Below are positions 3,394 to 50,988 of a stretch of DNA of 64,000 nt, one piece after another. The DNA is taken from positions 147,785-211,784 of IMG/VR virus record IMGVR_UViG_3300044633_003049; one strand, written 5' to 3'. Positions within the stretch are counted from its first letter, which is position 1, and each line of letters starts with the position of its first letter. The notes beneath the pieces were generated by a model. That model saw only the letters and a list, made by a program, of their open reading frames with translations. It did no database searches and was not told where the DNA came from. Position numbers and translations under genes: made by a program.

Positions 3394-4266
3394 CTAATCG
3401 ACATTTATGTAATTATTATTTTCAGTTTTAATAGGATTGAGGTCTTCAGTATTAATTCTCATATAACTCGCAGCACTTTCACCACAATTAACAACCTTAA
3501 CAACTTGATTTGTTAGATACGGTGATTCAAAAACTATTCTAATTGTTTTCTCTTCAGCAACATCAAATGATTTTGTTACACTACCATTAATTCCAATTGG
3601 TGATGTGGTTTCGTCTCCCCAATGTACCGTAAATGATGACCCCGATATTGATAAATCTTGTCCGTCAATTATTATATATTCAGACAATTCGTTCTTAATT
3701 TGTTGGGGGTATTCAGATGTCAAATTTCTAACACCTGTTACATTCGTTGTTCCGTCTGGATTTGTATCATTAGCTAAAATGATATTAACTAATTGATACG
3801 TTGTTGTATTGTTAATTGTTATTGTGCTACCAGTTTCAGTACAAACACTTTCATATGCGAAGTTTGCACTAATTTTATTATGTCCAATATTTTTATCAAA
3901 CTCAACCATATCTCCCATTTCATCGGCCGTTGCTTCTAAAAATAATGGTAGTTGGAAATCGTCATAAACTTGACTATTAATATGTGTTTCTATTTCTTGT
4001 TCTGTCGTACCAGTACCAATAATTAAATTCCATGTGTCTCCTGTTGTTGGTGTATTCCATTTATAATATCCACTTGTTACGGTACCACCTGTTACATTAA
4101 AAACTAAAAAACCTGTGTCGGGTGTAAATCCGGTAGCTAAAAAGTCGGTCGCTCCCGTCCATGAAATCGGCGTATCATTAGAATCATACCATGTCTTTCC
4201 CGTTAATGAAACTAATTTCACTTCAGGTATTTTTTTTCTTCTAATGGTATGGTTAATTCTTTTCAT
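3394..4266 (-). CDS. Hypothetical virion structural protein
   Basis: 290-aa ORF in the tail/baseplate operon, Thr/Gly-rich. Confidence 0.65.
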   Translation of the reverse strand: MKRINHTIRRKKIPEVKLVSLTGKTWYDSNDTPISWTGATDFLATGFTPDTGFLVFNVTGGTVTSGYYKWNTPTTGDTWNLIIGTGTTEQEIETHINSQVYDDFQLPLFLEATADEMGDMVEFDKNIGHNKISANFAYESVCTETGSTITINNTTTYQLVNIILANDTNPDGTTNVTGVRNLTSEYPQQIKNELSEYIIIDGQDLSISGSSFTVHWGDETTSPIGINGSVTKSFDVAEEKTIRIVFESPYLTNQVVKVVNCGESAASYMRINTEDLNPIKTENNNYINVD

Positions 4267-5071
4267 AAAACTTTATCGGGGTATTTGTTATTCCTGATTT
4301 TGTCCCTCTACTAATTCCGTTATATTTGTAAACTTGGTATGAATAATCTCTTTTATCAATATCAACTTGGTAGTACATATCATTTTGTTCAGTAATAGTG
4401 TGACTCGTACTATAACTATCATTTGTAAAATCTAAAATTGTACCTTCTTTTGCGTTATAAAACTTTGCTGTCATAAAAAAGGTGTTACTTGTCGTTGTAC
4501 CACTTAAATTTGTTTCAGTTAAAACACTCTCATCTTGGAACCAAAAGAAATACATATTTTCTTTGTTACTATAATTTGATCCTCTAAAAACAGGTAAATG
4601 TATATAACCATTAAGTGAATTATAAAACATTTTTTCACCTAACGGTAACGACAAATTTTTTGCAAATATTAATTTTCTATTTTGTCTTGTTGGTGGTTCA
4701 CATGTTAATACATTACCTGAGACGGTTCCTGGTGTTTTAAAAAATTCCAATCTAAAAAAACTTTCGGTGGCCTGTTTCAACATACTTTCATTTTCTTGTG
4801 AACTTATACCTTGTGGGGTATAATCTTGAGTATATGTTCCATCACTTAAAAAATAAAAATAAAACCAAATATCGGTTTGCGCTACACCATCAGATAAATA
4901 TGGTTTATGGATATATCTAACCGTTTCGTAATTCTCAATTGGATTAATAATATCACTTAACACTTCGGTTTCAAATTCTTTCAAATTTTCTTCCCAACCG
5001 AGATTTGTTTGAAAATCAGTTTCAGTATTTAATAATATATTTAAATCAGTATCTTTTCTTAATATTTTCAT
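4253..5071 (-). CDS. Hypothetical virion structural protein
   Basis: 272-aa ORF tightly packed in the baseplate operon. Confidence 0.65.
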   Translation of the reverse strand: MKILRKDTDLNILLNTETDFQTNLGWEENLKEFETEVLSDIINPIENYETVRYIHKPYLSDGVAQTDIWFYFYFLSDGTYTQDYTPQGISSQENESMLKQATESFFRLEFFKTPGTVSGNVLTCEPPTRQNRKLIFAKNLSLPLGEKMFYNSLNGYIHLPVFRGSNYSNKENMYFFWFQDESVLTETNLSGTTTSNTFFMTAKFYNAKEGTILDFTNDSYSTSHTITEQNDMYYQVDIDKRDYSYQVYKYNGISRGTKSGITNTPIKFYEKN

Positions 5072-5072
5072 G

Positions 5073-6863
5073 TTAACAATCTGAATTACTATTTTTATTA
5101 TTTATATCCATGAAACTCGTTATTCCATTTGATTTATTTTTATAATATCTTTCATTTCTTAAATAGAAATTAATGTTTGCTTTAACATAATGATTACCAT
5201 TCATAAAAGGAAAATCTGTTCCGAATCCATCGGAATCAACGTAACCGTGATCATATATATCTCTCCATCTCCAAACTTTATCATATGGGTCATACTTTGC
5301 ATTTTCAGGTAAATTGAAAATATCATTAGTATTTGCAGTTTCGGTATATGGTGATAATTCCCTTAATTTAATTCTATAATGTGGTTGATATATTAATCCT
5401 TCTAAATTTGTTGATGACGCATATGTTGAACCCGATGTTTGTCCGTGATTAAATATTGTTATTGGATTTGTGATTTTATGAAATGATTCACTTACAATTC
5501 TCTCAGTCATTTCTTTTGGGTTATATTCAACAAAGGCACCATTTAATATTGAACCTATTGGTAATGTTTGTCCACTTAAAAATGTAAATCCAGTGTATCC
5601 AGGTAAATTTGTGTTTCCAGTAAATGACGTACTCGTTAATCCAATTTCGTTTGATGTGGTTCCACTAAAATGTTCATCAATCCATGTATCGTGAAAATGA
5701 AATTTATATCCAACCTTTGGTGGATAATTAAAATATCCATTTCCATTTCTAAAAATTGCAGTAACAAAAACATTTGTTGGACTAAATCCTAAATTATTTG
5801 TTAATCCACTTAATTTTAATGGTTCCTTAAAATCATATAAAACAGATTCCATTCTATTTCTTTCAACTATAACATCATTTGTACCTACACTATTTTCAAA
5901 TAGTATTTTTTTCTCGTCTTCAAACACTGGACTTTCAAATCCAAGTGAATCCATTATATATCCACCTTCATTAGTTAATGTTTTATGTTTGTGAACATAA
6001 TATTTGGAAGTTGAAGCAACAATGTTATTAAAATCTTTACATCTTTTACCTAACATAATTGTACTGAATGTTGTTCCCGTTTTTATTTGTGACTTTATAA
6101 TATTAATGACATATTTTTTAGAATCAAACGTTTCATTACCAACTGAATTGATATAAAAGGTTCTACCTGTTAATGTTAATCCTGTTAATGTACTACCAGA
6201 TAGAACCACATGTTCACCTTCGCTCATTCCATGTTCAACTGGTGATGTTAATTCATAATATGTGGTATAATCCACGACTCTAAATGGAATACCATCTTTA
6301 GCGGTGAAACTAACTTTAGTTCCGCCTGTTAGCGTATAGTCCATTTTAAATTCACTATCACCACTATAAACATAACTTAAATATAAATTCCAGTTTTGGT
6401 ATGGTGCCGATATTGGTGTTACGGTTGTGTGTGCTGTTGATCCTGATTTTACTATGTTTGGTGTAAAGGTACCTAATGTATTTCCCGTTACCGGTAAATT
6501 AACTTCTCTATAAACGTCTCTTCTTAAAAATGCAAATTCGTCATATGGTAAATAACCATCAAAAACAGTACTATCTTGTATGTTACTACCGTCACCCGTT
6601 AAATATAATCTTTGTTTTAAATAAGAATAAGGTGTCGATCCAGAATATAAATTACGAAAAACCATTTTTAACTTTCCATATATCTTATAATTTATACTTT
6701 CATTACGTTCTTTATAATATTGTTCATCTATATCTAATATTATGTCCCTTTCACCTATTCGCATAAGTGTATCACTATTGTCAAGATTTAGTTTTAATTC
6801 TAATTCTTGGTCATCCGCCTTTGCGAATTTTTTACTTGGTAATATGATTTGTTTCTTTTCCAT
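5073..6863 (-). CDS. Hypothetical virion structural protein
   Basis: 596-aa ORF coupled to its neighbours; 14 (S/T)GxT motifs. Confidence 0.65.
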   Translation of the reverse strand: MEKKQIILPSKKFAKADDQELELKLNLDNSDTLMRIGERDIILDIDEQYYKERNESINYKIYGKLKMVFRNLYSGSTPYSYLKQRLYLTGDGSNIQDSTVFDGYLPYDEFAFLRRDVYREVNLPVTGNTLGTFTPNIVKSGSTAHTTVTPISAPYQNWNLYLSYVYSGDSEFKMDYTLTGGTKVSFTAKDGIPFRVVDYTTYYELTSPVEHGMSEGEHVVLSGSTLTGLTLTGRTFYINSVGNETFDSKKYVINIIKSQIKTGTTFSTIMLGKRCKDFNNIVASTSKYYVHKHKTLTNEGGYIMDSLGFESPVFEDEKKILFENSVGTNDVIVERNRMESVLYDFKEPLKLSGLTNNLGFSPTNVFVTAIFRNGNGYFNYPPKVGYKFHFHDTWIDEHFSGTTSNEIGLTSTSFTGNTNLPGYTGFTFLSGQTLPIGSILNGAFVEYNPKEMTERIVSESFHKITNPITIFNHGQTSGSTYASSTNLEGLIYQPHYRIKLRELSPYTETANTNDIFNLPENAKYDPYDKVWRWRDIYDHGYVDSDGFGTDFPFMNGNHYVKANINFYLRNERYYKNKSNGITSFMDINNKNSNSDC

Positions 6864-10297: not shown

Positions 10298-12130
10298 TTA
10301 ATATGTAGTCGTTCCTAATGTTTTGGTTCTAACTCTAATATCAGTATTAGGGAACCTTATTTGGAATATTTGATTAGACTTCATAAAAATGGTCATATCT
10401 GACTGTAATATTTCCTTAGTTAATGTGTCTTTGTATGCCATTGCGGTTTCTGATGAAGAATATAACCCACCAATCTTATTATACGCCCTGATATCAATTA
10501 CATTCACTACTCCAGGTATTTGACCAATATGTCTAATTAAATCTCCAATGAATAATGGGTCACCCATTTTTCTTTTAGAAATGTCAAAGAAATCTGTTGT
10601 ATCGTTAATTGCTGTTTTAACGACATCTGTTGGGTTTTCATTTTTGTCGATGACAATATCCATTTCCAATGATAAGTCAATAACTTCCCCACTTGCAATG
10701 TCAATATAATCATTTATCATTCTATATTCAGAAAGATATTCTATAATATTACTTTTTAATGTATTTGAAACTGTGTCAGATAAATTACCATTATCGTCAT
10801 AGGATAAAATTTTAATTTTTACCTTATTGTCTTCTTCAACGACGTTCACTTTTGCTGGTGCTCCAAATGTTGCTGGCATCACCTCAATTATTGATTTATA
10901 GTCATTTAAAGTAACCGCTCTATTTTGTGCAGCAAAATTATAAGAAATCATGTTTCTCAATTCTTCAATCGTTGGTTGATCTGCCCCACCGACAGCTGGA
11001 GTTACATTTGTAACCCTCATAGATTGTGTCACTTGTGTGTTAATGGTAGATTGAGGTCCGTTGATATCTAATTCCACATTATCAATACTCGTGATAACAT
11101 TCACACCTAAATTGGAATCTTTTCCTCCACCAACTCTGTATTTTATGAATAAGGTTGTACTTGATTTTGGTATTGCCCCCAATGACATATTATTAAGATA
11201 GGTTGAAAGATTAACTTTCATTGTACCATTCATATAACTATCTAAATTGTCTAATGGATCAACATTACCCGAACCAAATGTAACTGAAAAATATCCTTCT
11301 GGTGTATATTCAGTTATAAATTTATTTGTAACAATTTTATTAGTTCCAGCCTTAAAATTATTTTTATCTGATACTGCGGTCGGGTCCGGTACAAAAACTT
11401 TATCCTGTACCAAACTTTTAACTTCATACCATTTGTTTGTTAAATCACTAAATTCATTTGAAGTAGGATTAGTACCAAAGTTAGTACCATCTTTATGTAT
11501 AATACTACTAACACCTAACACATCTTGTTCGGGTAAATACAATTTTAAAAATGGCTTTTGGTCTAATGATGTGATTACTCTCCTATATATTCTTGTAACC
11601 CCATTAACTACCGCTTCTCTTTTTGTAATTGTATATGACACCAATGAATTATTTGCATTGAAATTTGGTATTTTTAATCTATTTGGTTCACCCTTACTAT
11701 TAAATGGGTCTGAAAAATCTACATCCTCTACGGTTTCAAAAATTTGTCCTCCTCCTGATACTTGTGTTCCTGATCTCATAATTCCCAAATATCTATCATC
11801 TTCTTTATCACCTCTAACTGGTACATTTATTGAGAAATCACATAACGCAACTGAAGGTCTTTTGCATGGTATTTTCATACCATAAGTTTTTGCAATATGA
11901 AATAATGATTGTCTTTGTTGAGCAAAATCTAACATTGTTTCTTGCCAAACTCTATCTATATGGAAGTGTAAGTTATCTGCTACCGCAGCATTTAAATCCA
12001 ATAATACTGAAAATATTGATGCGTCGTTGGTATTTTTAACCAAGTCAGGATAATATTGTGTTGTTAGATTTACTAACTCTTCTCTTAAACCTGCAAAATC
12101 TCTTGTTGCGTATGATATTTTTTTACTCAT
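10298..12130 (-). CDS. Baseplate wedge protein, T4 gp6 / baseplate J-like
   Basis: N-terminal RDF..LR..L...Y.D....DASIFSVLLD..A; YRVGGG..SN; QNRAVTLNDY motif; follows a gp25-like gene. Confidence 0.85.
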   Translation of the reverse strand: MSKKISYATRDFAGLREELVNLTTQYYPDLVKNTNDASIFSVLLDLNAAVADNLHFHIDRVWQETMLDFAQQRQSLFHIAKTYGMKIPCKRPSVALCDFSINVPVRGDKEDDRYLGIMRSGTQVSGGGQIFETVEDVDFSDPFNSKGEPNRLKIPNFNANNSLVSYTITKREAVVNGVTRIYRRVITSLDQKPFLKLYLPEQDVLGVSSIIHKDGTNFGTNPTSNEFSDLTNKWYEVKSLVQDKVFVPDPTAVSDKNNFKAGTNKIVTNKFITEYTPEGYFSVTFGSGNVDPLDNLDSYMNGTMKVNLSTYLNNMSLGAIPKSSTTLFIKYRVGGGKDSNLGVNVITSIDNVELDINGPQSTINTQVTQSMRVTNVTPAVGGADQPTIEELRNMISYNFAAQNRAVTLNDYKSIIEVMPATFGAPAKVNVVEEDNKVKIKILSYDDNGNLSDTVSNTLKSNIIEYLSEYRMINDYIDIASGEVIDLSLEMDIVIDKNENPTDVVKTAINDTTDFFDISKRKMGDPLFIGDLIRHIGQIPGVVNVIDIRAYNKIGGLYSSSETAMAYKDTLTKEILQSDMTIFMKSNQIFQIRFPNTDIRVRTKTLGTTTY

Positions 12131-19833: not shown

Positions 19834-19880
19834 GTGATTTTGATTTAAATTTTAATAATCATTTATGATATAATATACAT

Positions 19881-19910
19881 AAAAAAACCCAGACTGTGAA
19901 ATCTGGGTTG
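19881..19910 (-). terminator. Intrinsic terminator upstream of the SSB gene
   Basis: Minus strand aacccagatttcacagtctgggttttttt. Confidence 0.8.
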
Positions 19911-20162: not shown

Positions 20163-20182
20163 TTTTTAATATTTTTTAATTT

Positions 20183-21450: not shown

Positions 21451-24400
21451 TTATTTGTATAAAGGAAGGTCATCATCTCTAAAATACACCACGTCACCGT
21501 CTTTTAAACCTAATGCTATCATTAATTTTTTAGACAATGCAACGCCATAACCTGCAACTGATGGCCCAACACTAATCGGACCTGTTAGGTTATCAATACG
21601 CATTTCTGATTCACTAATTGGGGGTACGGTTACCGTTTTTCCGTTTTCAGGGTTTTTAAATAACGTTGATGTAGATATGATTCTATTAGGTGTTATTTTA
21701 TTAGATAAGAACTTTGTGGAATAGAATAATTTACTATTTGATACAGTTTTAACTGACTCCCATAGTAATGGTAATGGTTTTATTTTTAATGTATTAAGTT
21801 GGTTATTTCCGTATCTATCGACACCATTTAATAAACTCATTTCTATTTTATCATCCAACGGATTTTTTGTACCTCCCATTTCAACCGCAATTGCTCTTAA
21901 CCATATTCCACTATTACTTACTTGTTGAATGTACTTCTCATCTTCAAATCCATTATATGGAATACCAAAACTACTAATACCTGTTTTATATATTAATGTT
22001 TCACCATTAATACTTTTACCTCCGTTATCAACAGTAACGGATCCGATATCTGTTTGTATTGATTTTTCGTTTTTATTAGAACCTATTAAACTATCAGCTT
22101 GTTTTACTTTAGCCACCGCACTGTTTGTTATTTTATCAAAATAAACCCTATAACTTGAGAAGAACGAATCTTTAGGGTCAGGTAACGATGCGTATGGTAT
22201 TCTTGTTCCTTTAAATGAAGTACTGATTTTATTTCCTTGAATGCTATGTGATACTTCGGTAATCCAATATGAACCTCTAAACATTGGTACATTCTTTAAA
22301 TAGAAAAACATTGTTGGTTGAATCATCACATTACCCATACATGAAACTTCACAGGTATATGAAGCTTGTCTATAAACATCAAATAAACCGATATCAACAT
22401 TATATGTTGCACCACCACTTTCAGAACGTCCCATATTTTCATATACGGCGAACGATTCACTTGTATTTCTAATTGAGTTTTGATCAAGTTTTACTCCTTT
22501 GAATATTCCTTGATTTTGGTCACCAATACTAACTTCAAATGCAACAACTTTATTAGATTTACTTAAATCTCCAGTTTTGAAAACTTCAGGTATGGTAATT
22601 GATAGGGGTCCACCTTGTCCATTAAATAAATTACCACTATCATTTTTAAATTTGTATTTTTCACTAATGTCAGATAATTCCAAATGTTTTGATGTTGGTC
22701 CCGTATATTGAAGAACTATCTTTGGTGCGGATTCTTGGTAATCAACTTCTAAAAATGTTCCAAATATATTTTTAGCAACTTGTTTTGATGAAGTTACTTT
22801 AGATTTATTTGTAAAGTTAGTTCCGTTAAAGTTTACATATGCAGGTAATGCCCTCATATCAAATCCAGTTCCTGAAATTAACATACCAATAACACTATAC
22901 AAATCTACGTTGTCATTTTTAGGGTCTTCTAATGCTATAAGTTTATCTAATGAAATGTAAGCTTGACTACCAATATCTTTATTGGCTTTATCAATAAATA
23001 AAAACTCTTCCAATAGTCCTCTTTGACCTATGGAATTTCCAGACGACCATTTATCATTAAACGACTTAAAGTGATTGTATAATTCCAATTTACCTAATAA
23101 ATCGTTATAACCATTTGTAATTGTTAATTTATTATTGGAAGTTCCTTTTGACACAAAATCAGGAGATTTAATTTTATCAATAATTTGTTGTAGATATATG
23201 TTAAATCTATATTCAAATTCAGTTAATACATTATCCTTTATATATGTTTGGAATCCAATTTTAGTGGTGAATTTATCTCCATATCCACCAGCAAAAATTA
23301 AAATTAAAGGTCTAAATAATTTGATATTATCTTCACTTAATATTATATTATTTGTGATAAAAAATTGTTTATATTTTAAATCTAAATCTTCACCGACATA
23401 TATTTTAATGTAATCTTCGGTTCCAGGAATCCAATTACCATCAATATATTGACCTGAAGTATATTGTGATTGATTGTATTCATTATATGTAAACGTGTTA
23501 CCTGTTGAAAATTTTGTAAATCCATCCCAAACATATAATTTAATTTCTTTAGGATTTCCTAATGTAATTTTAATTAAATTATCATTAGTTAAAATATCAT
23601 TTGTAATTGTTTTTAGATTATCTTCTTGTATTGTTCTAATTGAACTATACACGTCTTTTGTTGAGTCAATTTTAGTACTGTCAACAGTAACGATTGATTT
23701 TAAAAGATTTTGAAAATTATCATATCTAATATAATGTCTATGTCCTGATGATGTTTCAATATAATCGGGGAATATTTTTCTTTCAACCTCAACATTTACT
23801 CTTTCAGATGCAAACTCTATAAAATACGTTTCAAATAAATCTAAAATATCAGGACTAAAGGTTCCAATTAAATCAATTACTTTTCTTTTATTTTCACTAA
23901 CTGAATAATGATTATCTAAATTTCTATCATCAATATTTAAACTTCTATTATATTCGTATGGTGTGTTAAATGTTTTTCCACTAAAAGATTCACCATTTGT
24001 ATTTTCATCTTCGTACCAAACAACTCTGAAATTAGATTGTTCACCTTGATTAAAGTCGATAATATCAATTTCAATATTATTTATTAAATCAACATAAAAA
24101 TCGTTATATGTATTTAGATATTCTTGTTTGTTAGACCCATCACAAGGTAATAATGTATAATAGGTACTACCAGTTAATATTTTAGAATTATCCACATATG
24201 ATGTCCAATAATTTATTCCATCATTTATTTTATTTGTTCTACTTCTACCAACATATGTGCTCCCACTTACTGAACTATAGAAACTATCTGTACTTCCCGT
24301 TGAAAAATTAAAATAACTATACCCATTAACAACATTGTGAAATACATTGTCATAATATGGGTGTAACCCAATATTGGTTTTTCCACTATATGTTACAACA

Positions 24401-27607: not shown

Positions 27608-30600
27608 TATTTATAAAAATTTAAAGTGGTTCCAAGGTTATTTTTTGATGAGAATATTTTAAATATATCATCTGATTTTGTTAAATCTGAAACCTCACTA
27701 GATGGTGAAGTTTCATATTCTATTGGTGTTTCATTACTTCTAATAGGTGCAACATCAATTGTTAATGTTGTTTTATTATTTGTGTTAACAAATAAATCAA
27801 ATTTTTCATAAAAATTTTGTGTGGTATATTGTAACAATTCATCACCAATCCAACGATTAACAAGTGGGTCCACAATATCTGATTTATGTCCAATTAGGAA
27901 TACTTGTAATATTGATTTAATATCTTCATTTGAAATTGTTGCAGATTCAAGATATACTGTGTTAAAATCAATTGATGAGTTAAATAATGAAGTAGTTTTT
28001 AAATCAAAACTTCTTAAATAATCAATAACTACATTGTAGTTTGATGTGAATCCTGATTGATTAAATCCCGTTAAAGGTGTTTTTACCAATGTTGTTTCAA
28101 CAATTTTAGTGTCTCCTGAATATATTGCAATGTAGTTTAATTTATCTATTATTGATACAGTTTCATTTCTCGATGTTTCAACTTCTTTTATTGATTTTAA
28201 TGTTGAAAATTCATCAATAATGTCAGATACTATTTTATTAATAATAGGTTTAATTATATCTTCCGCCTCTTTTGATACATCCTCACCACCCATTTCAAAC
28301 CCTAACATATCCATAAGTTCTTTAGTTGGTAATGTTGTGATTGAATATGTTAATGTGTTTTTAAATGCGTTAGAATAAAAAGATAAATTATTATTTCCAC
28401 TATATTCTCCTAACATATTAATAACATCACCTTCTTCAATATTAATATTTAACTCATTAATTGTTCTATAATCTGGTGAGAAAAATAATCCAACTACTTT
28501 AGGACCATATTTTTCATAAATTGATTCATATGTAGATTTATATTTTTTAGTATAGTTATCCGCTAATTTATATAATTCATTTATTAAGGTTGTGTATACT
28601 AATTTAGTACCACTACCAACACCAATATATGTGCCTTGTACTATTTTATTCGGGTCCGTCGAAACTGATGGGGTTTTTGCTATGTCAATATTATTTAATG
28701 TTTGTAAAAATTCTTTTGTGAACTTTTCTCTATTCTCATATCCAATTCTACCATCAGTTGGTATTGACCTTTCATCATACATTTCTGTATTTGCAAAGAA
28801 ATTAGACGATAACGCATTTTGTAATTTTTCAACAGGTCTATCTAATCCTTGTCCTCCAATAAAATTAACTTGTAACTGAACGTTAGCAATCATTGGTTGT
28901 ACACCAATACCTTCAGGATTAAAATCCCAAACACCTTCTTCATATGTTATATTAATGTCTTTAATAATAATTTTTGAATGGTAGAAATCACCAATTCTCA
29001 ATACACAAATTGGTGGTGGTCCAAAGGTTGTGTTTCTTGCACCAATATCATTATTATCTGAAAGTCCTTTAATTGGTATGGTATCACCAGGTCTTAAACA
29101 TTGTAATAAAAATGTTAATCTACTATTCAAACCTTCTGGTGTTGTTGAGTGAAAAGATGGGTGAAAATATTTTAATTTTTCTGTTAAAGATTTAAATGCT
29201 ACCGGTGAGTCCTCCTCTAATTTTTTAAAATAAAAACACTCCGATAATGTTTTCATTATAATTCTTTTCATAACATCTATCGATGGTTTCTTTTTTGTAA
29301 TGTCTACCGTATCCCTTGAAACTACTAATTTTAGAGGTGGAATGTTAATCTTTTGTACTGTTTTTTCACCCGCACTTTTTGTATATTTAATTTTTACTTT
29401 ACCCTCTCTACAATAAAATGCCGTTGGTGAATATACCTTTAATAATGTATTTGTAAATGGTTTAGAACAATCAACATTTGTTTCTCCTCCAGCATTATCT
29501 AACACATAACTTTCACCAAATGTACTAACATTAAATTTTATTTGTCCATCCACATCATAACCAAAATCTTTAAAACTTTTTGTAATTGGTAAAGTGTTAA
29601 ATCGTAAACCATCCTTTACAAATGGGTCAAGTTTAAGTTGGTCGAACCAAACTAAACTTGGTGGGTTATTATTTTTAGTTATATAACCAATAATGTATTT
29701 TAGTAATGAATGTATTCTTCTTATACCTAAATAGAAATTTTTATTTTCATCTCCCGCTTCAGATGTTGTAGTTAAAATTTGAATTTCAGCATCTCCAACA
29801 ATAGTTTTACCTGATAAAACCGTTTTTAAATCATCTAATTGTTTATTTAATTCGGTAAAATTTACACCTAACTCGGTGAATCCACTTGTTATTTTACCAG
29901 TTATTTCGGTGATAACACTTGGAGTTGATGTTGATCCGGTACTTCCTATTAGTAAAAGTTTATCTGATGAATTTAACGAACTATTCATTGCTGTCGTTAA
30001 ATTAGTGACACATGTACCTGACGTTCCACTATAAGATGTGATTTGTGAACCGTAATCTCCATCTGAAATTGTTAATGAATTTCCTTGTTTACTTGGTATG
30101 TCATTTTCAAAATAAAATGAATTTTTTATATTATACTCTATATTTGTAAATTTATTATTATCAGTATCTCCATTGTCGGCTGGTAATGGTTCACTGGTAA
30201 ATTTAATATTAGTTATTGCCTGTTTTTCAATTCCAGCATTAAGATATTGTTGGATTAAATCTCTATCGTTTTGGTCTAAAGTGGTGTATGTTTGTATTAA
30301 AGAATAGAAGTCAACATCTTGTGCACCAGCGAAAAACGCATTTATATAGTTATCTGATTCTTCATCTGACATTCCTTTGAAATGTTCTCTAACCAATAAA
30401 TTCATAATACTTGGGTGGTCAACAACTACTTTAAATGAAACTTGTCCGGTTCTTTCGGTATTTTGATATGTGTAAATCGGTTCGGGTCTTCCAATAAAAG
30501 AATTCTTTTCCCAACTTGCACTATTTTGTTCTGACATTTTTAAATCATATGGTGGAAACCACATGACTCTTCCTCCGTTATTACCTCTTTCACATGCTGG

Positions 30601-35321: not shown

Positions 35322-35810
35322 TTAATAAACTTGGATACAACGGTCCATTCTTAATGAAGCGTCAATTGTTGCCAAATCATCTCTTGAGTAATCTAAATCA
35401 CCGAAGTTCAAACTTGTTAAGAAACAACCTTGTAAAATCCATTTTTCAACCACAACTCCCGTTGGGTCTAACATCTCCAATTCAATGTCTTTCTTATAAC
35501 CCGCAGCATATCCCATACGACCTGTAACTGACTCCGCATGTAAACGGAACCATTCCATAAGTGCTTGAGAAGCAGAAGGACCAATTGGGTCTTTAAATTG
35601 AACTTTAATCTCTTCCCACTCAAATTGACCAGCAACATAAGTTTTTGTGTTCAAGAAAGGAATCTCAACTGATTTAATTTTAGCAGATGGTCTCGCTGTG
35701 GAGAATACATACCACTCATTTATTCCTAAAGATGATGGAAATCTTAGGATAAATCTATTTTTTCTTTTCGGTTCGTAAGGAACCGGCATTTTCATTAATA
35801 AATCTGCCAT
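35322..35810 (-). CDS. Tail tube protein (gp19-like)
   Basis: YEPKRKNRF, RPS, YVAGQFEWEEI, YKKDIELEMLDPTG..VEKW.L.GCF, GDLDY; follows the sheath gene. Confidence 0.9.
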   Translation of the reverse strand: MADLLMKMPVPYEPKRKNRFILRFPSSLGINEWYVFSTARPSAKIKSVEIPFLNTKTYVAGQFEWEEIKVQFKDPIGPSASQALMEWFRLHAESVTGRMGYAAGYKKDIELEMLDPTGVVVEKWILQGCFLTSLNFGDLDYSRDDLATIDASLRMDRCIQVY

Positions 35811-36134: not shown

Positions 36135-38966
36135 TTAGATATTGTCAAATGAAGCTCCTGTTGGAGTGATTACAAATTCCAAATCAATGAATTCTAAAGA
36201 ACGAGTTGGTTTGATATAAATCTTACCTCTTAATGTGTTAGCATCGATGTCCTCTGGATCATTAGATACACTCACACGGAAGTCATACAAACCTCTTTCT
36301 TTCTTAATTGATTCCAAGATAGGATTTACTAATCTTAAGAACTCTTGTCTTACTTGGTCGTCATTTTGTTCAAACAATAACCTTACAGCTACCGCAGAAA
36401 TCAATTTTCTAGCTCTTAATAATAATCTTCTTACGTTGATTCTATCTAAAGCCGACTCTCTAACTTGTAACGTTTTATTACCCCATATAATGGTACCTGT
36501 ATCAGAGAATGTTGCAATTGGGTTGATTCTCGCCTTATATAACTCATCTCTTTCGTCAAGAGTAAGTTTCTTTTGTGCTTTGATTGCGTTTACCAAACCT
36601 CTACTGTAACCCGCAACTGCGAACCAAGGATAAGATACGTTGTCAGTTAAGGCGATGTTCTTAACAACCTCACCTGTTGGTGGAATATATAATTGAGTTG
36701 CATTATCCGTGTCTCTTACTTGAATCCAAGGCCAATATGTGGCTGAATAGTTTGAGTCAACTGCGATACCGTCTAAATCGTCAATAACGTTAGATGCAAT
36801 AGTTTCATTTGGTGCTCCAATTATATAAATTGAATCCGCTCTATCAGTTTCAATCATGTCAATTGCTTGAGTTGTTAATGAACTATGGTCGTAGAAGTTA
36901 ATACCTGGAGTTGCAAATACGTTAATATCTACGGCCTCAGGATTTGCATATGTTTGAATACCTTCTAAATAAGCATAATAATCAGAGTTTCCATTTGCAG
37001 TGTCAAACAATCCACCATTTGTTGTAAGACCTGAAATATATGTTAATTTTCCAAATATATAACCGTCACCATATGTTCTTACTTGTCTGTAAATGTCCCA
37101 ACCATCAAAACCACCACATACGGCAAATGTAAATTTACGGAAGTTAATACTATCTAATTTACCTTTATCGGTACCTTCTAAATCATAAGGTGTTGTTTGG
37201 TACATTAATCCTGAAACTGTATTTCCAGTTATTGTAGCTGCGTTTATAGATAAGTGAAATCCGTCTGTTGATCCTTTTTGAGTTGCTTCTGTTGAACATT
37301 TATATTTAAACAAATCGGAGTCAAAATTAAAATTACCATCAGAAGATAAACCTAAAGATGTTTTTCTAAATTTATCACCATTACTTGTTATGTCATCATA
37401 AATTGTTTCACCAGAATCAAAAAATTCAGTTTTATAAAGAACACTACCTAATGTTGTTGAACCTGATAAAGTTGCATTTGTAAAACCTTTAAATCCTGCA
37501 GGAAATGCATTTGATGGTGCGTTAGAGTCCATAAGTAACATAATGTATTTAGAATTCAAAGTATACTCACCAGTTGATGTACCTATTTTTCTAGCAACAT
37601 ATCCTGCAACGTCTGGATTCATTGAACATCTTGAGAATTTTTCCAAAACAACCATGTTTTCATCGGAATCATTAAAATCTCTAACTAATATATCAAATTC
37701 ACCTGTTTCAATATTAATATTTTGAATTGTGATTTTAATTTCCTGATTTGCGGCGTTTCCGTCAGAAATTGTAATAACATCAAATAAATCATCAACTTTA
37801 CCACCACGAACTTCAGAAACCACAGTAGGTGACTTTGGTGTGTCCCAAGTATTTGAGAAGTTGTCACCTTCCGCATTATATACTTCAGTTAGGCTTAAAC
37901 CTCTAATTAAACCTTGATTATATAAGTTTTTTGTTAAGTTCGGATAAACTTCGTGAACATATAATGGAACATCGTTACCATCTTTATCATATGGACTTGT
38001 TCCTAAAACTTTAGTTATGTATTTTGTTGACGTTGAATCTAAACTACACGTGAAAACCTTAGCACCTGTAGTTCCTGTAACATAAATATTAAATTCCGAT
38101 AATGGGTCACTTGTTAACGTTGCCCCACTAATAGTAAAAGATGTGTTTCCAGTAACTTGAAAATTTAAAGATTCTTGTGAATAATTTCCTCTTGATCTTA
38201 ATGCCGCCATAACAATTTCCTTATCATATACTGAAGTTGCGGTATATGTATATTTTGTTGTGGTAAAATTCATTGAACTAGCAGCATAAACAAATAAGTA
38301 ACTATACACTTCGGTACCGTTAGTATTGGTAAACACGTTATTCCAATTTTTTATAGTTGCGGTTCCAATAGGACTTGTTTTTTGATTTCCCGTTAAACCT
38401 GATGTTGCTGATGATGGAACATTTCCAATTGTAAACCAATCACCTGTAGATAAACCGCTACCGTAATTAGTGACTATATAATTTGTAACCGTTGTACCAG
38501 TTGAATTGGTTTTACCAGATAATGAACTATAAAAAGTACTATATGTTGGGTTTACAATGTCCTCAGCTGTTGGTGTTGTAATACCTGTAGTTGAACTTGG
38601 AGTTTGTGTTAAGTCAACAGATATACCACCTATTGTTTTAATGCCGAATGTTTTTCCTGCTTTGTAACCTGTCTTACCTAATACTCTTGTTACAAATAAT
38701 TGATTTGACTCTTGTAAATAAGATTTAGCGACATAACCTAATTCATATTTTGGATTGCCAGCACCATCTTTTTCAGGTGAGGTTGGTCCGAAGTATGTTT
38801 TAAATTCGTCAAAATTTGAAATTAATATTGGTTCAAAAGCGGGACCTTTTAAGGTTTCACCCACTAATCCCAATGTTGTAACACCTATACTTTGTGCTAC
38901 GAATGTTAGATCTTTCTCTGATGTATAAACACCAGGAGACACGAAAACTCTGTTATTACTTGCCAT
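36135..38966 (-). CDS. Tail sheath protein (gp18-like)
   Basis: FVSPGVYTSEKD, GETLKGPAFEP, SNYSATYWPW, PWFAVAG..RG, INPI, WGNKTL, RINVRRLL. Confidence 0.95.
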   Translation of the reverse strand: MASNNRVFVSPGVYTSEKDLTFVAQSIGVTTLGLVGETLKGPAFEPILISNFDEFKTYFGPTSPEKDGAGNPKYELGYVAKSYLQESNQLFVTRVLGKTGYKAGKTFGIKTIGGISVDLTQTPSSTTGITTPTAEDIVNPTYSTFYSSLSGKTNSTGTTVTNYIVTNYGSGLSTGDWFTIGNVPSSATSGLTGNQKTSPIGTATIKNWNNVFTNTNGTEVYSYLFVYAASSMNFTTTKYTYTATSVYDKEIVMAALRSRGNYSQESLNFQVTGNTSFTISGATLTSDPLSEFNIYVTGTTGAKVFTCSLDSTSTKYITKVLGTSPYDKDGNDVPLYVHEVYPNLTKNLYNQGLIRGLSLTEVYNAEGDNFSNTWDTPKSPTVVSEVRGGKVDDLFDVITISDGNAANQEIKITIQNINIETGEFDILVRDFNDSDENMVVLEKFSRCSMNPDVAGYVARKIGTSTGEYTLNSKYIMLLMDSNAPSNAFPAGFKGFTNATLSGSTTLGSVLYKTEFFDSGETIYDDITSNGDKFRKTSLGLSSDGNFNFDSDLFKYKCSTEATQKGSTDGFHLSINAATITGNTVSGLMYQTTPYDLEGTDKGKLDSINFRKFTFAVCGGFDGWDIYRQVRTYGDGYIFGKLTYISGLTTNGGLFDTANGNSDYYAYLEGIQTYANPEAVDINVFATPGINFYDHSSLTTQAIDMIETDRADSIYIIGAPNETIASNVIDDLDGIAVDSNYSATYWPWIQVRDTDNATQLYIPPTGEVVKNIALTDNVSYPWFAVAGYSRGLVNAIKAQKKLTLDERDELYKARINPIATFSDTGTIIWGNKTLQVRESALDRINVRRLLLRARKLISAVAVRLLFEQNDDQVRQEFLRLVNPILESIKKERGLYDFRVSVSNDPEDIDANTLRGKIYIKPTRSLEFIDLEFVITPTGASFDNI

Positions 38967-41032: not shown

Positions 41033-41033
41033 G

Positions 41034-48491: not shown

Positions 48492-48845
48492 TTAAAAAAT
48501 ATTAATGTATAATTTTTCCTTAACGGGTAATATAAGTTTATTACCATTATCAAACGACACATTTACTTTTCCTTCAAATTTACCTATTTCAGATGTCTGT
48601 TGTTCAGTGAATCTATAAACGATATAATATTCGTCAGTCGTTTGGTTATATAATTTTGTTCTTGTTGTGATATTACAAGTTTCATTTAATAATACGGGTT
48701 CACCGGTACTAACATCAAACATGTCAAATGTGATTGTTGCATTTTCCAATAAATCATTAAATGATGATTTGTCGTTTTTACCGTCATCAATCATCCTCAT
48801 TTTTAATATTGGGTCAGATGCCCCTTGTCTTATAAAGAATTCCAT
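48492..48845 (-). CDS. BppU N-terminal-like baseplate/adaptor domain protein
   Basis: FFIRQGASDPILKM, ATITFDM, YRF...QT...GKFEGKVNV.F....LILP. Confidence 0.55.
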   Translation of the reverse strand: MEFFIRQGASDPILKMRMIDDGKNDKSSFNDLLENATITFDMFDVSTGEPVLLNETCNITTRTKLYNQTTDEYYIVYRFTEQQTSEIGKFEGKVNVSFDNGNKLILPVKEKLYINIF

Positions 48846-48867
48846 ATGTTATAAATATATATTTTTG

Positions 48868-50988
48868 TTATAAACCGTATTTAGATTTGTCTGCGTTATA
48901 GTTATTCAAAACTTCAGTTGATGTTAATGCACTACTATATAAACGGGTTATACCAATCTTACCATCAAAGTATTGTGGGTATTCACCATTATTATATGAA
49001 CCAATGTATAAGTTTGTAGTAGTGTTTAATATACTTGCTAAACTGTGATTTACAGTACCGATACTAACACCATTAACAAATGTTTGAAATGTATTGGCCG
49101 CAACATTAGTAAATACATAAACTATTTGATACCATGTATTAAGTGTTGCGGTGTGGTTTGTACTATTAACAAATAGTGTTGATCCTGAACCCGCACCCGA
49201 ACCATATTGTCCATAAAATGTTGAAGCAGTTGTTCTAACACTATAACCCACACTTGTTGTTAACCCAGCTGCGTTAAATTTACCAAGTACTACATCATTA
49301 CCTGCTACTGATTGATTCACCCAAACTTCTACTGTCCAATCACCACTTCCCGGTTCTAATGCCGCATTATCTGCAACTGAAATTTGTGATGAAGAACCAT
49401 TGTATGTGAAGTATGGTGATGTATATGTTATATTACTCATTGTTCCATTCAAATCATTACCTGATAAATCATTAATTGTTGTTCCACTACCAGGATATGA
49501 AGAAAGGTTTGATGGGTCGTAATGTAATACTAAATTGCTTGTAGTTATCCCACTTGCGGCGACACTTGGTGTGGGTGTAACTGAATTGGTAGGTGTGACC
49601 GTATTAGTGGGGGTATTAGTGGGTGTATTCGTTGGAGTTTGCGTAGGTGTTTCAGTAACCGTAGGAGTTGGTGTGTTAGTTGGAGTAGGTGTTGGGGTTT
49701 CACTTCCTGTTGGTGTTGGTGTGTTAGTCGGTGTATTAGTCGGCGTTTGCGTTGGAGTAACGGTATTTGTTGGTGTCGAAGTAATTGTGTTAGTAGGAGT
49801 GTTTGTAGGTGTAATACTTGGTGTTGGTGTATTGGTTGATGTATTAGTTGGTGTAACAGTATTAGTAGGAGTAACAGTATTAGTAGGTGTTGGTGTGTTA
49901 GTTGGTGTTGGTGTTGGGCTTGGTAAAACATCTGAACAACCATATATTGAATAATTTGGTTTAATTGATGTTAAATAATGATGATTAACATGAACAAAAT
50001 CCAACGGTTCTTCAAAATACTTAACTTGTTTTAAAACACCATTAAGTGAATTATTACCAAAAATTTGTACGATTTCATTTTCAGAAGACCTTAATGATGG
50101 AATTATTTCCTCAAAGTTTTCTAATTTATATATTCTTTTACCGTTATGATAAATTTTAAGTGTTCCTAATCTTTTTTGTTTTTCTCCTGCCCATTTTTTA
50201 TTTAATTCTTCCACATAACTATATTCAGTATCCCCCGTAATCCAATTTAATGATCCGGTAACCATTGTATAACCTGTGGTGATTTGTGTTGAGTGACCTA
50301 TAAATGAACCCGAAAAGAAACTACCAGTATCACCAGTTGTCGGAGCCCATAATTCATCAGTATAACTAACTGCGTGTGGACCTAATATTAAATCATTAAA
50401 TCCCCCCTCATTCTCAATCTCACAACCATAAAGATATGTGTATCTATCAAATGTGATTGTAATATTAAAATCGTCATATATTCCATTTGCACATAATTCA
50501 GGAGTATTACCTGTTATTGTGTAATATGACTCCGTGTACCCACTATCTGGATTACATAATCCCGAATAATGAAATGACTCCCATTTTATCTTTTTATTAT
50601 TGGTAAATGAGAATGTTAAATTATTATCCGCGTAATTCCCATTAGCCAAATCATCTTTAATTCCTAAATAGTAAAATGTCGTTCCAGTTACTAATCTATC
50701 AAAAACCAAATCTAATGTCCAACCCTTCTCTGTTCTTCTACGAACAGTAAAATCACAGGTGTCTCCCGTATAACGAGTATTCACCGCAACTTCCCAAGGT
50801 GAAGTTAGTCCCGTTAAACAAGAAGAATCGATAGTTAGTCCTGTATATGTTATTTCCGTGTCGAAATCTAAGACCTCTTCATTATAATCCATTTGAACTT
50901 TTGATAGTTCATAGTCATATAATTCGGAATAATCTACCTTTAAATCGAGTTTGGAACCGTAAAATCTTAAAATATTCTGATTAGCCAT
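48868..50988 (-). CDS. Virion protein with Pro/Thr mucin-like linker and C-terminal LamG/concanavalin A-like domain
   Basis: LVLHYD...[50 protein letters not shown]; start MANQN at 50988 preferred. Confidence 0.8.
49545..49920. repeat. Low-complexity Pro-Thr repeat (TPTPTNTPT)
   Basis: Translation of the 48868 ORF. Confidence 0.9.

What the first reader, a model, noticed from the sequence alone, without database searches (positions are those of the whole stretch)
3394..50988. (S/T)-G-x-T tetrapeptide marks outer virion proteins: candidate glycosylation sequon
Seen, by manual count of SG/TG dipeptides with Thr at the fourth position: ORF 5073 has 14 of 16 and ORF 3394 has 7 of 11. The sheath has 11 of 22, all outside its conserved C-terminal core. 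There are also about 12 hits in the LamG protein, about 8 in the hub and 7 in ORF 1-1059. In contrast, RNR has 0 of 11, the SNF2 helicase 0 of 3, tape measure 0 of 6 and tube 0 of 2; polymerase has one, and DnaB and RecA have only their Walker A. The motif therefore recurs in unrelated folds that face outward and is absent from enzymes and luminal proteins. Established: some mycobacteriophages glycosylate virion proteins with their own glycosyltransferases. Inference: this is a recognition sequon for a phage-wide virion modification, plausibly by the three glycosyltransferases at 54-60 kb.
Basis: partly seen in the sequence, partly recalled or inferred. Interest (0 to 1): 0.85.

Follow-up and report, generated by a model that had tools for sequence, protein, structure and literature searches.

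The report
Recurrent S/T-G-x-T motif on phage tail
The outward-facing, fast-evolving parts of this uncultured freshwater jumbo phage's tail proteins carry the four-residue motif (Ser/Thr)-Gly-x-Thr five to seventeen times more often than chance; the pattern is real and shared by hundreds of relatives, but the sequence evidence fits a favoured strand-end turn somewhat better than a sugar-attachment site.

Summary
[ST]-G-x-T takes 14 of 16 [ST]G dipeptides in ORF 5073-6863, 7 of 11 in ORF 3394-4266, 11 of 22 in the sheath and 12 of 20 in the LamG protein. Over ten outer proteins that is 72 copies against 14.5 expected, even after shuffling within 15-residue blocks.

It is a protein-level motif with a hydrophobic residue before it. 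Only this tetrapeptide is enriched. It is shared by hundreds of IMG/VR relatives and absent from the nearest isolates. It sits in proteins with no detectable homology to one another. Its positions turn over between lineages.

The glycosylation reading is neither shown nor refuted:
- The three glycosyltransferase-like genes are real and lie in a strictly syntenic core block.
- A distant relative has that same block but a motif-free sheath (0/7) and neighbour (1/20).
- In one motif-rich lineage the capsid and portal proteins carry none.
- Motif density across relatives is a continuum rather than on/off.

Gly alternates with Asp/Asn, the third residue is polar, and structure models place several copies in two-residue hairpins. 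My best reading (0.42) is a structural strand-end turn that multiplied in variable outer tail domains. A phage-encoded O-glycosylation sequon remains a live alternative (about 0.22). Mass spectrometry or co-expression would decide.

The parts
5073..6863 (-). Distal baseplate/fibre protein (596 aa), the strongest carrier: 14 of 16 [ST]G dipeptides are [ST]G.T
   Evidence: It has no Pfam, PHROG or PDB relative. The family pools to 367/497 over 33 non-redundant homologues. Motif columns are conserved with S/T swaps at position 1.
6159..6200 (-). Three tandem 5-residue units [ST]-G-x-T-[LF] (aa 222-236 of ORF 5073)
   Evidence: Homologues differ here by 5-residue indels. In the structure model this is a loop after strand 218-222.
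3394..4266 (-). 290-aa distal tail protein: 7 of 11. Six copies cluster in aa 22-88 (window 4003-4203).
   Evidence: Family total 151/268.
4253..5071 (-). 272-aa distal tail protein: 2 of 3 here. Longer homologues carry up to 10 of 12.
1..1059 (-). C-terminal part of a fibre-like protein that runs off the window: 7 copies
   Evidence: block shuffle z = 4.8.
36135..38966 (-). Tail sheath (943 aa): 11 of 22, all before the conserved core
   Evidence: Pfam Phage_sheath_1 and Phage_sheath_1C at aa 658-934; phrog_23. Family total 608/1399 over 76 homologues.
38055..38627 (-). Sheath insertion (aa 114-304) that is absent from the Mel-JY01 sheath; it holds 7 of the 11 copies
   Evidence: This region is hypervariable, and tandem motif doublets occur here in relatives.
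48868..51009 (-). Virion-type protein with a C-terminal LamG/ConA-like domain: 12 of 20. Nine copies lie in aa 56-261 (window 50227-50844).
   Evidence: Pfam Laminin_G_3 5e-16 and phrog_8510. Family total 114/162.
21451..27294 (-). Seven copies lie in aa 937-1267 (window 23494-24486).
   Evidence: No family hit. Homologues have 4/14 and 8/25.
27607..32367 (-). 1586-aa tail protein: 6 of 21, a weak carrier
   Evidence: Family total 90/424.
61185..63242 (+). 685-aa protein of unknown role: 3 of 8, a weak carrier
   Evidence: Family total 103/328. It is 0/0 in some lineages.
54187..55407 (+). GT-B-type glycosyltransferase-like gene (candidate modifier; no link to the motif shown)
   Evidence: Pfam Glyco_trans_1_4 at 7e-4, below the family cut-off. 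Present in 53/53 syntenic loci, with 151 near-invariant residues. Homologues occur in Phapecoctavirus and other phages.
58249..59313 (+). GT-B glycosyltransferase-like gene; the nearest solved structure is AmGGT, an Agt homologue
   Evidence: PDB 8xsg at 4.2e-6. AmGGT/Agt biology from PMC12159676. No tblastn hit in 50,697 isolate phage records.
59315..60094 (+). GT2-family (GT-A) glycosyltransferase-like gene with a conserved E-x-D-D
   Evidence: Pfam Glycos_transf_2 at 2.2e-6, above the cut-off. D91 and D92 are invariant. No hit in isolate phages. 1756 clusters in metagenomes, all unnamed.
10298..12130 (-). gp6-like baseplate wedge: non-carrier control (0 of 4; family 3/125)
35322..35810 (-). 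Tail tube: non-carrier control (0 of 2; family 0/113)

Best explanation
The motif is hydrophobic-[S/T]-G-x-T. I read it as a favoured strand-end turn or cap that multiplied in the fast-evolving, Thr/Ser-rich, outward-facing domains of tail proteins in a broad group of low-GC aquatic myoviruses.

Inferred mechanism:
- The hydrophobic residue is the last buried residue of a beta-strand (sometimes of a helix).
- The Ser/Thr hydroxyl caps the backbone, as in an ST-turn.
- Gly takes the positive-phi position.
- x is a polar, exposed residue.
- The beta-branched Thr starts the next extended segment.

Such a hydrophilic, uncharged tight turn would let hypervariable loops and inserted domains fold while their sequences change. 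New copies would arise by small duplications and indels (5-residue units, tandem doublets) and travel with exchanged outer-domain modules. That would explain why density varies by lineage and why positions turn over.

Shown: the statistics, the position preferences, the phylogenetic distribution and the placement in loops in two models. Inferred: the turn geometry and the reason for the proliferation.

This reading does not exclude that the hydroxyls are also modified.
For: Position preferences fit a Gly turn:
- Position -1 is L/I/V/Y/F in 64% of 1572 instances, and x is T/S/N-rich.
- At conserved sites Gly alternates with Asp/Asn, the usual substitutes at a positive-phi position.

AlphaFold models:
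- Sheath copies 501 and 580 are modelled as strand, two-residue loop, strand; copy 297 lies at the end of a strand before a two-residue loop.
- ORF 5073 copy 179 lies in the loop between two strands.

Related forms with a non-hydroxyl fourth residue:
- S-G-x-V tandem repeats occur in the GT-bearing relative.
- P2 gpH has T-L-S-G-G-L-T-F.

Milder enrichment elsewhere:
- S-RIM2 1913-aa structural protein, z = 3.2.
- L240 1976-aa protein, 27/102.

Distribution across relatives:
- Among 116 sheath representatives the motif fraction is a continuum from 0 to 0.7, not on/off.
- There is no genome-wide co-variation between carrier families.

Against a link to the GT genes:
- The GT block is present in a relative with a motif-free sheath and neighbour.
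- It is intact in lineages whose sheath has lost most copies.
- Capsid and portal are not carriers in a motif-rich lineage.
Against: - The size and sharpness of the enrichment (5x pooled, 17x in ORF 5073) are unusual for a turn preference. The background in 439 proteins of sister phages is 9.2%, with a maximum of 33%.
- Asp/Asn, structurally equivalent caps, are not enriched at position 1, and Ser is not accepted at position 4.
- Copies occur as tandem or overlapping pairs (spacings 3-5) and directly after helices, which are not canonical hairpins.
- Position +5 is only weakly hydrophobic.
- Full-length alignable sheaths exist without any copy (P0021, 0/7), so the fold does not need the motif.
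- At the homologous loop 645 the outgroups have NAAN or GGAN.
- The carriers share no detectable domain.
- The models are of modest confidence (pLDDT 49 and 66), and no coordinates were available to measure geometry or exposure.
Confidence: 0.42

Rival explanations
1. One reading: [S/T]-G-x-T is the acceptor sequon of a phage-encoded cytoplasmic O-glycosylation system. The GT2-like enzyme would start a glycan on exposed loops of tail proteins, the two GT-B enzymes would extend it, and the tail would end up coated with sugar.
For: Features expected of a motif read by an enzyme:
- A sharply specific tetrapeptide in non-homologous, outward-facing proteins.
- A hydroxyl is required at position 1, with S about equal to T and not D/N. 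Thr is strongly preferred at position 4.
- Positional turnover across lineages: 65 alignment columns of the close-clade sheath alignment carry the motif in at least one sequence, and at least 7 gains or losses are needed on the tree of 150 sheath representatives.
- Clustered and tandem copies.
- The motif is laid over loops that have other sequences in outgroups.

The GT genes:
- Three GT-like genes are core to the clade.
- Two have no homologue in 50,697 isolate phage records.
- One is closest to AmGGT/Agt, whose relatives extend glycans on cytoplasmically glycosylated adhesins.

Lineage check and precedents:
- Every lineage walked in full (the L117 and L069 lineages, with the GT block seen on the L069 contig) is motif-rich in its baseplate proteins.
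- Precedents are mycobacteriophage virion glycosylation (cited in PMC12619734) and TibC heptosylation of Ser in an N-S-G-G loop of TibA.
Against: - There is no direct evidence of any modification.
- A distant relative carries the whole syntenic GT block, yet its sheath is 0/7 and its 606-aa neighbour 1/20. Its GTs are only 28-36% identical, so a changed specificity is not excluded.
- The GT genes sit with dUTPase, PhoH and a sigma-like gene rather than with the structural genes, which fits DNA or envelope chemistry equally well.
- The GT genes stay under tight constraint where sheath copies are lost.
- Capsid and portal are not carriers in a motif-rich lineage.
- Motif density is a continuum and does not co-vary across carrier proteins.
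- The Gly to Asp/Asn alternation and the polar-x preference are not predicted by a sequon.
Confidence: 0.22
2. The motif is itself a weak ligand-binding element. A hydroxyl-rich Gly loop would bind phosphate, carboxylate or sugar groups, and many copies on the tail surface would give multivalent, reversible adhesion to host-envelope or environmental polysaccharides.
For: - The carriers are the outermost and receptor-proximal parts, including a LamG lectin-fold protein.
- Lineage-specific gain and loss would fit host switching.
- [ST]-x-T-G-x-T loops bind the FMN phosphate in flavodoxins (paper listed; the mechanism is recalled from memory).
Against: - No binding data, and no pocket-like conservation around the copies.
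- The copies are scattered and turn over, rather than forming conserved sites.
- Hosts are unknown.
Confidence: 0.08
3. The motif is the target of another hydroxyl-directed modification (phosphorylation, acylation, nucleotidylation), or the recognition site of an assembly chaperone encoded outside this window.
For: - The same sequence-level arguments as for a sequon apply.
- About 148 kb of the source contig lies outside the window and was not examined.
Against: - No kinase or similar enzyme was found in the window.
- No precedent is known to me.
Confidence: 0.06
4. The enrichment is an artefact of Thr/Ser/Gly-rich composition, of low-complexity repeats, or of picking one pattern out of many.
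For: - The carriers are Thr-rich (9-17%), and T-x-T is also enriched.
Against: - Global and 15-residue block shuffles leave z = 15-18.
- G.T is the top pair at spacing 2 in an unbiased scan, and all of its excess depends on [ST] at -1.
- The pattern replicates in hundreds of independent homologues.
- Thr-rich proteins of other phages do not show it.
Confidence: 0.01

Closest known systems
Two-residue beta-hairpin or type II' Gly turn with an ST-turn cap (general structural motif; its statistics are recalled from memory)
   Same: Gly sits at the second position and is replaceable by Asp/Asn. The third residue is polar Ser/Thr/Asn. Hydroxyl or beta-branched residues flank the turn, and a hydrophobic strand residue comes before it. 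Several copies are modelled as strand, two-residue loop, strand.
   Different: An ordinary turn preference gives about 1.2-2x enrichment, against 5-17x here. Asp/Asn caps are not used here. Tandem and overlapping copies, and copies after helices, are not hairpins.
Tail-fibre motif of the form T-[LM]-[ST]-G-x-L-x-[FL], for example T-L-S-G-G-L-T-F in P2 gpH
   Same: The core is the same: hydrophobic residue, [ST], G, x, then a beta-branched or aliphatic residue, in a fibre protein. ORF 5073 aa 222-236 and the L471 fibre fragment (19/23) look like multiplied versions of it.
   Different: P2 gpH has one copy, with Leu rather than Thr at the fourth position. No homology to P2 gpH or any annotated fibre family was found. 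That this motif is widespread in fibres is my recollection and was checked only in P2.
Mycobacteriophage virion O-glycosylation (Freeman et al. 2023, as cited in PMC12619734)
   Same: The phage encodes its own glycosyltransferases, and Ser/Thr-rich exposed parts of virion proteins are candidate acceptors.
   Different: As cited in PMC12619734, the glycans there are on C-terminal tails of the capsid and tail-tube subunits. Here the motif is internal, the tube has none (0/113 in the family), the capsid of a motif-rich relative has none, and no glycan has been demonstrated.
Autotransporter heptosyltransferases AAH/TibC acting on AIDA-I/TibA (PMC4358343)
   Same: This is cytoplasmic hyperglycosylation of many Ser residues in short loops of a beta-rich protein. 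One mapped site is Ser followed by Gly-Gly.
   Different: In that system only Ser is modified, not Thr, within a 19-residue repeat family, by a dedicated heptosyltransferase. No heptosyltransferase-family hit was found in the GT-like genes here.
NGT/Agt cytoplasmic protein glycosylation of Actinobacillus (PMC12159676)
   Same: The gene at 58249-59313 is closest among solved structures to AmGGT, an Agt homologue (4.2e-6).
   Different: That system starts on Asn in N-x-S/T, which is not enriched here. No NGT homologue was seen. The similarity may be no more than GT4-family level.
Asp-box / BNR hairpin, S-x-D-x-G-x-T-W (consensus recalled from memory)
   Same: It contains G-x-T in a beta-hairpin and recurs in unrelated folds.
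   Different: The defining Asp two residues before Gly and the Trp after Thr are absent. Position -1 is hydrophobic and +5 is mixed.

Membership tests
Phage virion O-glycosylation system (mycobacteriophage type) | The phage encodes glycosyltransferases | tested here: met
   GT2 Pfam hit above the cut-off with a conserved D-D. PDB 8xsg GT-B hit at 4.2e-6. A third, weaker GT-B hit.
Phage virion O-glycosylation system (mycobacteriophage type) | Glycan demonstrated on virion proteins | not testable with these tools
   This needs mass spectrometry or glycan staining of virions or co-expressed proteins.
Phage virion O-glycosylation system (mycobacteriophage type) | Acceptors are the capsid and tail-tube subunits (C-terminal Ser/Thr-rich tails) | tested here: not met
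   Tube 0/2, family 0/113. Major capsid protein and portal 0/7 each in a motif-rich relative. The capsid of the window's own clade was not found.
Phage virion O-glycosylation system (mycobacteriophage type) | Presence of the modifying genes tracks presence of the acceptor motif across relatives | tested here: inconclusive
   The GT block is in 53/53 clade loci. It is absent from the motif-free isolates. It is also present in a distant relative with a motif-free sheath and neighbour.
BAHT (AAH/TibC) autotransporter hyperglycosylation | Dedicated heptosyltransferase-family enzyme | tested here: not met
   Pfam and NCBIfam scans of the GT-like genes report only Glyco_trans_1_4, Glycos_transf_2 and weak unrelated hits.
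BAHT (AAH/TibC) autotransporter hyperglycosylation | Acceptor Ser in short loops between short beta-strands of a repeat protein | tested here: inconclusive
   Some copies are modelled between strands, but the carriers are not one repeat family.
Type II'/ST-turn beta-hairpin motif | Gly at a positive-phi position (interchanges with Asp/Asn) followed by a polar residue | tested here: met
   At conserved sheath sites the second position reads G45 D9 N2, G45 D12 and G43 N15. x is T 18%, S 14%, N 10%.
Type II'/ST-turn beta-hairpin motif | Located in a tight turn joining two antiparallel strands | tested here: inconclusive
   Among the 10 sheath copies outside the low-confidence stretch, 501 and 580 are modelled as two-residue hairpins, with 297 at the end of a strand before a two-residue loop. 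The others follow helices, lie in longer loops, or in one case lie within a strand. Model confidence is modest and no coordinates were available.
Asp-box / BNR repeat | Asp two residues before Gly and an aromatic residue after Thr (S-x-D-x-G-x-T-W) | tested here: not met
   Position -1 is hydrophobic in 64% of instances, and Asp is not among the preferred residues there or at position 1 (x0.6). Position +5 is mixed and Trp is not among its common residues.
Bacteroidota general O-glycosylation sequon D-[ST]-[AILVMT] | Enrichment of that tripeptide in the modified proteins | tested here: not met
   25 observed against 34.4 expected.
N-glycosylation sequon N-x-[ST] (NGT type) | Enrichment of the sequon in the carriers | tested here: not met
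   118 observed against 122.6 expected.
Collagen-like G-x-y repeat | Long uninterrupted triplet arrays | tested here: not met
   The collagen-like fibre at 1025-3355 is not enriched (6 against 6.0 expected). Spacing-3 overlaps are a small minority (43 among the spacings of 1572 instances).

The most novel reading that the evidence does not exclude
Hydrophobic-[S/T]-G-x-T would be the first defined acceptor sequon for phage-encoded O-glycosylation of virion proteins. The conserved GT2-like enzyme would read it, and the two GT-B enzymes (one Agt-like) would extend the glycan. Sheath, baseplate and fibres would be coated with glycans across a large, globally distributed group of uncultured freshwater jumbo phages. 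Motif gain and loss would then record an arms race over surface recognition.
Probability: 0.22. Interest if true: 0.85.

Novelty: new variant of a known kind. Interest (0 to 1): 0.5.

Why it matters
A four-residue motif this sharp, repeated in unrelated tail proteins of hundreds of uncultured phages, has not been described. Full-text searches for the motif found nothing relevant.

If it is structural, it is a simple sequence marker for the exposed, fast-evolving modules of tail proteins in metagenomic phages. It would also be an example of how such modules stay foldable while they diversify.

If it is a sequon, it would extend virion glycosylation from a few mycobacteriophages to abundant aquatic phages. 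It would also supply a sequence rule that makes the question testable by peptide assays and by re-searching existing viral metaproteomes.

Either way it gives a concrete handle on proteins that currently match no family.

Tried and rejected
**Alternative causes tested and rejected**
- DNA-level motif: rejected. Ser uses both AGY and TCN codons and Thr codon use matches background.
- Composition or local low complexity: rejected by global and block shuffles.
- Avoidance of deamidation-prone NG/DG: rejected. NG is 56 against 51 expected and DG is 39 against 39.
- A shared hidden domain in the carriers: no support (BLAST; hhalign of ORF 5073 against the sheath; profile against PDB).
- Asp-box, N-x-S/T and the Bacteroidota O-glycosylation motif: not enriched or not matching.
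- Decay of the GT genes in low-motif lineages: not seen.
- A GT-bearing but motif-free genome inside the close clade: not found. The low-sheath lineage (sheath 2/9 and 5/10) was walked 30 kb to its baseplate. There the motif is abundant: 6/9, 5/6, 4/7, 5/7, 6/8, 5/9, 13/28 and 13/23.

**Tests that gave no answer**
- GT co-occurrence within the clade: uninformative, because the block is in every locus.
- Genome-wide co-variation of carrier families: none detected, but power was low.

**Searches and models that led nowhere**
- The AlphaFold model of ORF 5073 was poor (pLDDT 49).
- The fold search with the sheath model returned only sheaths.
- The GT2 profile found no significant PDB relative.
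- The GT2 homologue search returned only unnamed proteins.
- The search for the clade's own major capsid protein, using the Mel-JY01 capsid as query, returned only sister-group loci.
- Literature searches for the motif strings found nothing relevant.
- Lambda Stf (orf-401 and orf-314) shows no comparable motif.

Full report
**What the window is**

The window is 27-35% G+C. It is identical to the last 64 kb of the 211,784-bp IMG/VR contig IMGVR_UViG_3300044633_003049.

It encodes a contractile-tail module on the minus strand:
- a collagen-like fibre at 1025-3355;
- four distal proteins with no family match (3394-4266, 4253-5071, 5073-6863, 6863-10243);
- a gp6-like wedge at 10298-12130;
- two very large tail proteins (21451-27294 and 27607-32367);
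- a hub subunit, the tube and a 943-aa sheath.

Replication genes are interspersed: a class II-like RNR, DnaB, a 5'-3' exonuclease, RecA, a gp32-like SSB, an SNF2 helicase and PolB.

A plus-strand block at 51-63 kb holds a GT-B-like gene, dUTPase, PhoH, an Agt/AmGGT-like GT-B gene, a GT2 gene and a sigma-like gene.

The nearest isolate by sheath is Microcystis phage Mel-JY01, at only 33% identity. IMG/VR holds hundreds of relatives on contigs of up to about 335 kb. A 2025 paper describes freshwater 'moraphages' of 200-307 kb with predicted Bacteroidota hosts and four core glycosyltransferase orthogroups (PMC12619734). These may be the same or a neighbouring lineage; I could not verify this.

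- Whole-protein shuffles give z = 14.6 for ORF 5073, 8.2 for ORF 3394, 7.2 for the sheath and 6.2 for the LamG protein.
- After shuffling within 15-residue blocks, ten outer proteins still carry 72 copies against 14.5 expected.
- In an unbiased scan of all residue pairs, G-x-T is the top signal at spacing 2. Its whole excess depends on Ser/Thr before the Gly: Thr follows [ST]G in 72/158 cases and other-residue-G in 46/453 (odds ratio 7.4, p = 5.5e-20).
- Close variants and known sequons are at expectation: [ST]G.S, [DN]G.T, [ST][DN].T, N-x-S/T and D-[ST]-[AILVMT].
- Codon use is diverse, so the signal is at the protein level.
- The zeros in the enzymes are just the chance expectation, not avoidance.

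**The motif in relatives**

The pattern is a property of protein families, not of this genome alone. Pooled over non-redundant IMG/VR homologues, the share of [ST]G followed by x-T is:

| Family | Share |
|---|---|
| ORF 5073 | 74% |
| LamG protein | 70% |
| ORF 4253 | 57% |
| ORF 3394 | 56% |
| Sheath | 43% |
| 61185-63242 | 31% |
| 6863-10243 | 26% |
| 27607-32367 | 21% |
| Tube, wedge, RNR, SNF2 | 0-2% |

Over 1572 instances the logo is: hydrophobic (L/I/V/Y/F, 64%), then S or T about equally, then G, then T/S/N-rich x, then T.

Controls are at background:
- Mel-JY01, 4/86;
- 439 proteins from 80 sister-group loci of similar G+C, 9.2% with a maximum of 33%;
- sister-group sheaths, 0-2 of 4-14.

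A few large structural proteins of other aquatic phages show a mild excess.

**Is it a shared domain or a fixed structural site? No.**
- The carriers share no similarity by BLAST or by profile-profile comparison.
- In the close clade some sites are conserved, for example sheath 150, 297, 580 and 645 in 36-45 of 61 sequences. Even so, 65 alignment columns carry the motif in at least one sheath.
- Seven of the window's eleven sheath copies lie in an insertion (aa 114-304) that Mel-JY01 lacks.
- At the alignable loop 645 the outgroups read NAAN or GGAN where the clade reads SG[LNH]T.

A search of 1.84 billion representative proteins returned 150 sheaths at 33-70% identity.
- In their variable parts the motif takes 26% of [ST]G, against 9.7% in the conserved C-terminal 300 residues.
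- The fraction is heterogeneous (chi-square p = 5e-7) but forms a continuum, not two classes.
- On a tree of the conserved core the clearly rich state is clustered, yet well-supported branches force at least 7 changes. One clade of 37 has no rich member.
- Full-length alignable homologues exist with none (P0021, 0/7) and with eight copies at entirely different positions (P0005).
- One distant lineage has a fibre fragment with 19 of 23.

So the motif is a lineage-variable overlay on outer domains, and its positions turn over.

**Structure**

The ORF 5073 model is poor (pLDDT 49). In its one confident stretch, copy 179 lies in the loop between two strands, and copies 222-235 and 262 lie in longer loops that run into the next strand.

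The sheath model (pLDDT 66; the insertion region is mostly 65-92) places the copies as follows:
- 501 and 580 as strand, two-residue loop, strand;
- 297 at the end of a strand, just before a two-residue loop;
- 150 and 189 just after helices;
- 156, 272 and 518 in longer loops, and 280 at the start of one;
- 127 inside a strand.

At conserved sites Gly alternates with Asp/Asn, the usual substitutes at a positive-phi position. These features fit a Gly turn with a hydroxyl cap.

Other features do not fit a simple hairpin. Relatives have tandem doublets and overlapping copies, Asp/Asn are not used at position 1, and position +5 is only weakly hydrophobic.

ORF 5073 aa 222-236 is three 5-residue units that vary in number among homologues. 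It resembles the single T-L-S-G-G-L-T-F of P2 gpH. A GT-bearing relative has S-G-x-V tandem repeats instead.

**The glycosyltransferase link**

The three GT-like genes are credible enzymes:
- GT2 scores above the Pfam cut-off and has invariant D91-D92.
- The gene at 58249-59313 matches PDB 8xsg (AmGGT) at 4.2e-6. Its Agt relatives extend glucose on cytoplasmically N-glycosylated adhesins.
- The third is a weak GT-B hit.

GT2 and the Agt-like gene have no tblastn hit in 50,697 isolate phage records. The block is strictly syntenic in 53 of 53 full-flank loci and tightly conserved. No GT-less clade member exists to compare with.

Three results loosen the link:
1. A lineage whose sheath has lost most copies (2/9 and 5/10) and whose 61185-63242 homologue has none keeps an intact block. 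It is still motif-rich in its baseplate proteins, so this is protein-specific loss.
2. The genome encoding the motif-free sheath P0021 carries the whole block in the same order: GT-B-like 28%, Agt-like 36% and GT2 29% identity, with dUTPase, PhoH and a sigma-like gene. Its sheath is 0/7, the 606-aa protein at the LamG position is 1/20, and the other large neighbours total 1/11. Only about 32 kb of it was seen, its distal baseplate was not reached, and the enzymes are divergent enough that a changed specificity is possible.
3. In the motif-rich P0101 lineage (sheath 15/44), the major capsid protein, portal, protease and terminase carry none. The motif is therefore tail-specific rather than virion-wide.

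Sheath and 27607-32367-family counts do not co-vary across 21 genomes.

**Verdict**

Its cause is open.

I favour, at about 0.42, a structural strand-end turn or cap that proliferated in variable outer tail domains. That reading accounts for every position preference, for the Gly to Asp/Asn alternation, for the modelled hairpins, for the continuum of density and for the independence from the GT block.

It does not comfortably explain the sharpness of the specificity, the exclusive use of hydroxyl residues at position 1, or the tandem copies. The O-glycosylation sequon (about 0.22) and other recognition roles therefore stay open.

A co-expression and mass-spectrometry experiment, or a re-search of existing viral metaproteomes, would settle the matter quickly.

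Noticed in passing
window 1025-3355 (-): Collagen-like tail fibre with six Collagen-repeat stretches (Pfam 2.5e-42), 24% Ser and 20% Gly. It is not enriched for the motif (6 against 6.0 expected).
   Followed up: partly
window 39238-39741 (-) and 39752-41104 (-): The 167-aa protein is a paralogue of the C-terminal 183 residues of its 450-aa upstream neighbour (37% identity, 1e-29). This is a tandem partial duplication next to the sheath gene.
   Followed up: no
window 6159-6200 (-), ORF 5073 aa 222-236: Three tandem 5-residue units [ST]-G-x-T-[LF]. Homologues differ here by 5-residue indels, so the copy number varies.
   Followed up: partly
outer proteins, e.g. LamG protein aa ~470-486 (window ~49550-49600): Thr-Pro and Pro-Thr dipeptides are about twice as frequent as expected (64 and 58 against 33.5). 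This indicates Pro/Thr linkers between domains.
   Followed up: no
window 54187-55407 (+): Unlike the other two GT-like genes, this GT-B-like gene has 26-34% identical homologues in Phapecoctavirus-type E. coli phages, Klebsiella and Acinetobacter phages and 735-kb uncultured phages. Campylobacter phages are also among the 142 matching records. Most of the listed homologues are annotated as hypothetical.
   Followed up: partly
window 51042-63242 (+); L475 177-5880: The block GT-B-like, dUTPase, PhoH, small ORF, Agt-like GT, GT2, sigma-like gene is conserved in order. It holds even in a relative at 25% G+C whose proteins are only 28-41% identical, which points to an old functional unit.
   Followed up: partly
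L475 8181-9998 (606-aa protein of the P0021 genome): It contains a run of S-G-[IN]-V-S type tandem repeats, that is S-G-x-V rather than S-G-x-T, at the genomic position where the window has the LamG protein.
   Followed up: no
L471 12226-13278: A 351-aa N-terminal fibre fragment from a distant lineage (sheath 38% identical) has 19 of 23 [ST]G as the motif. Many copies form composite units such as L-S-G-G-T-I-S-G-N-T-N-F.
   Followed up: partly
IMGVR_UViG_3300031787_000001 (L069, L300 at the start; L370, L449 at the far end): On this 286,785-bp contig the tail module runs off the start and continues at the other end. The contig is therefore circularly permuted or terminally redundant, which suggests a complete genome.
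   Followed up: partly
L134 (LR756508.1) 19635-22124 and 23133-25613: This 484-kb uncultured phage carries two sheath paralogues close together (about 1 kb apart). One of them shows 3 of 6 motif copies.
   Followed up: no
window 60095-60793 (+): Weak Sigma70 region 2 match (1.1e-3), conserved in 77 of 78 related loci. It is probably a phage late sigma factor directly downstream of the GT2 gene.
   Followed up: no
L127, homologue of window 39752-41104: One lineage has 7 of 21 in this otherwise motif-poor neck-region protein. This suggests a local gain of a motif-bearing segment.
   Followed up: no
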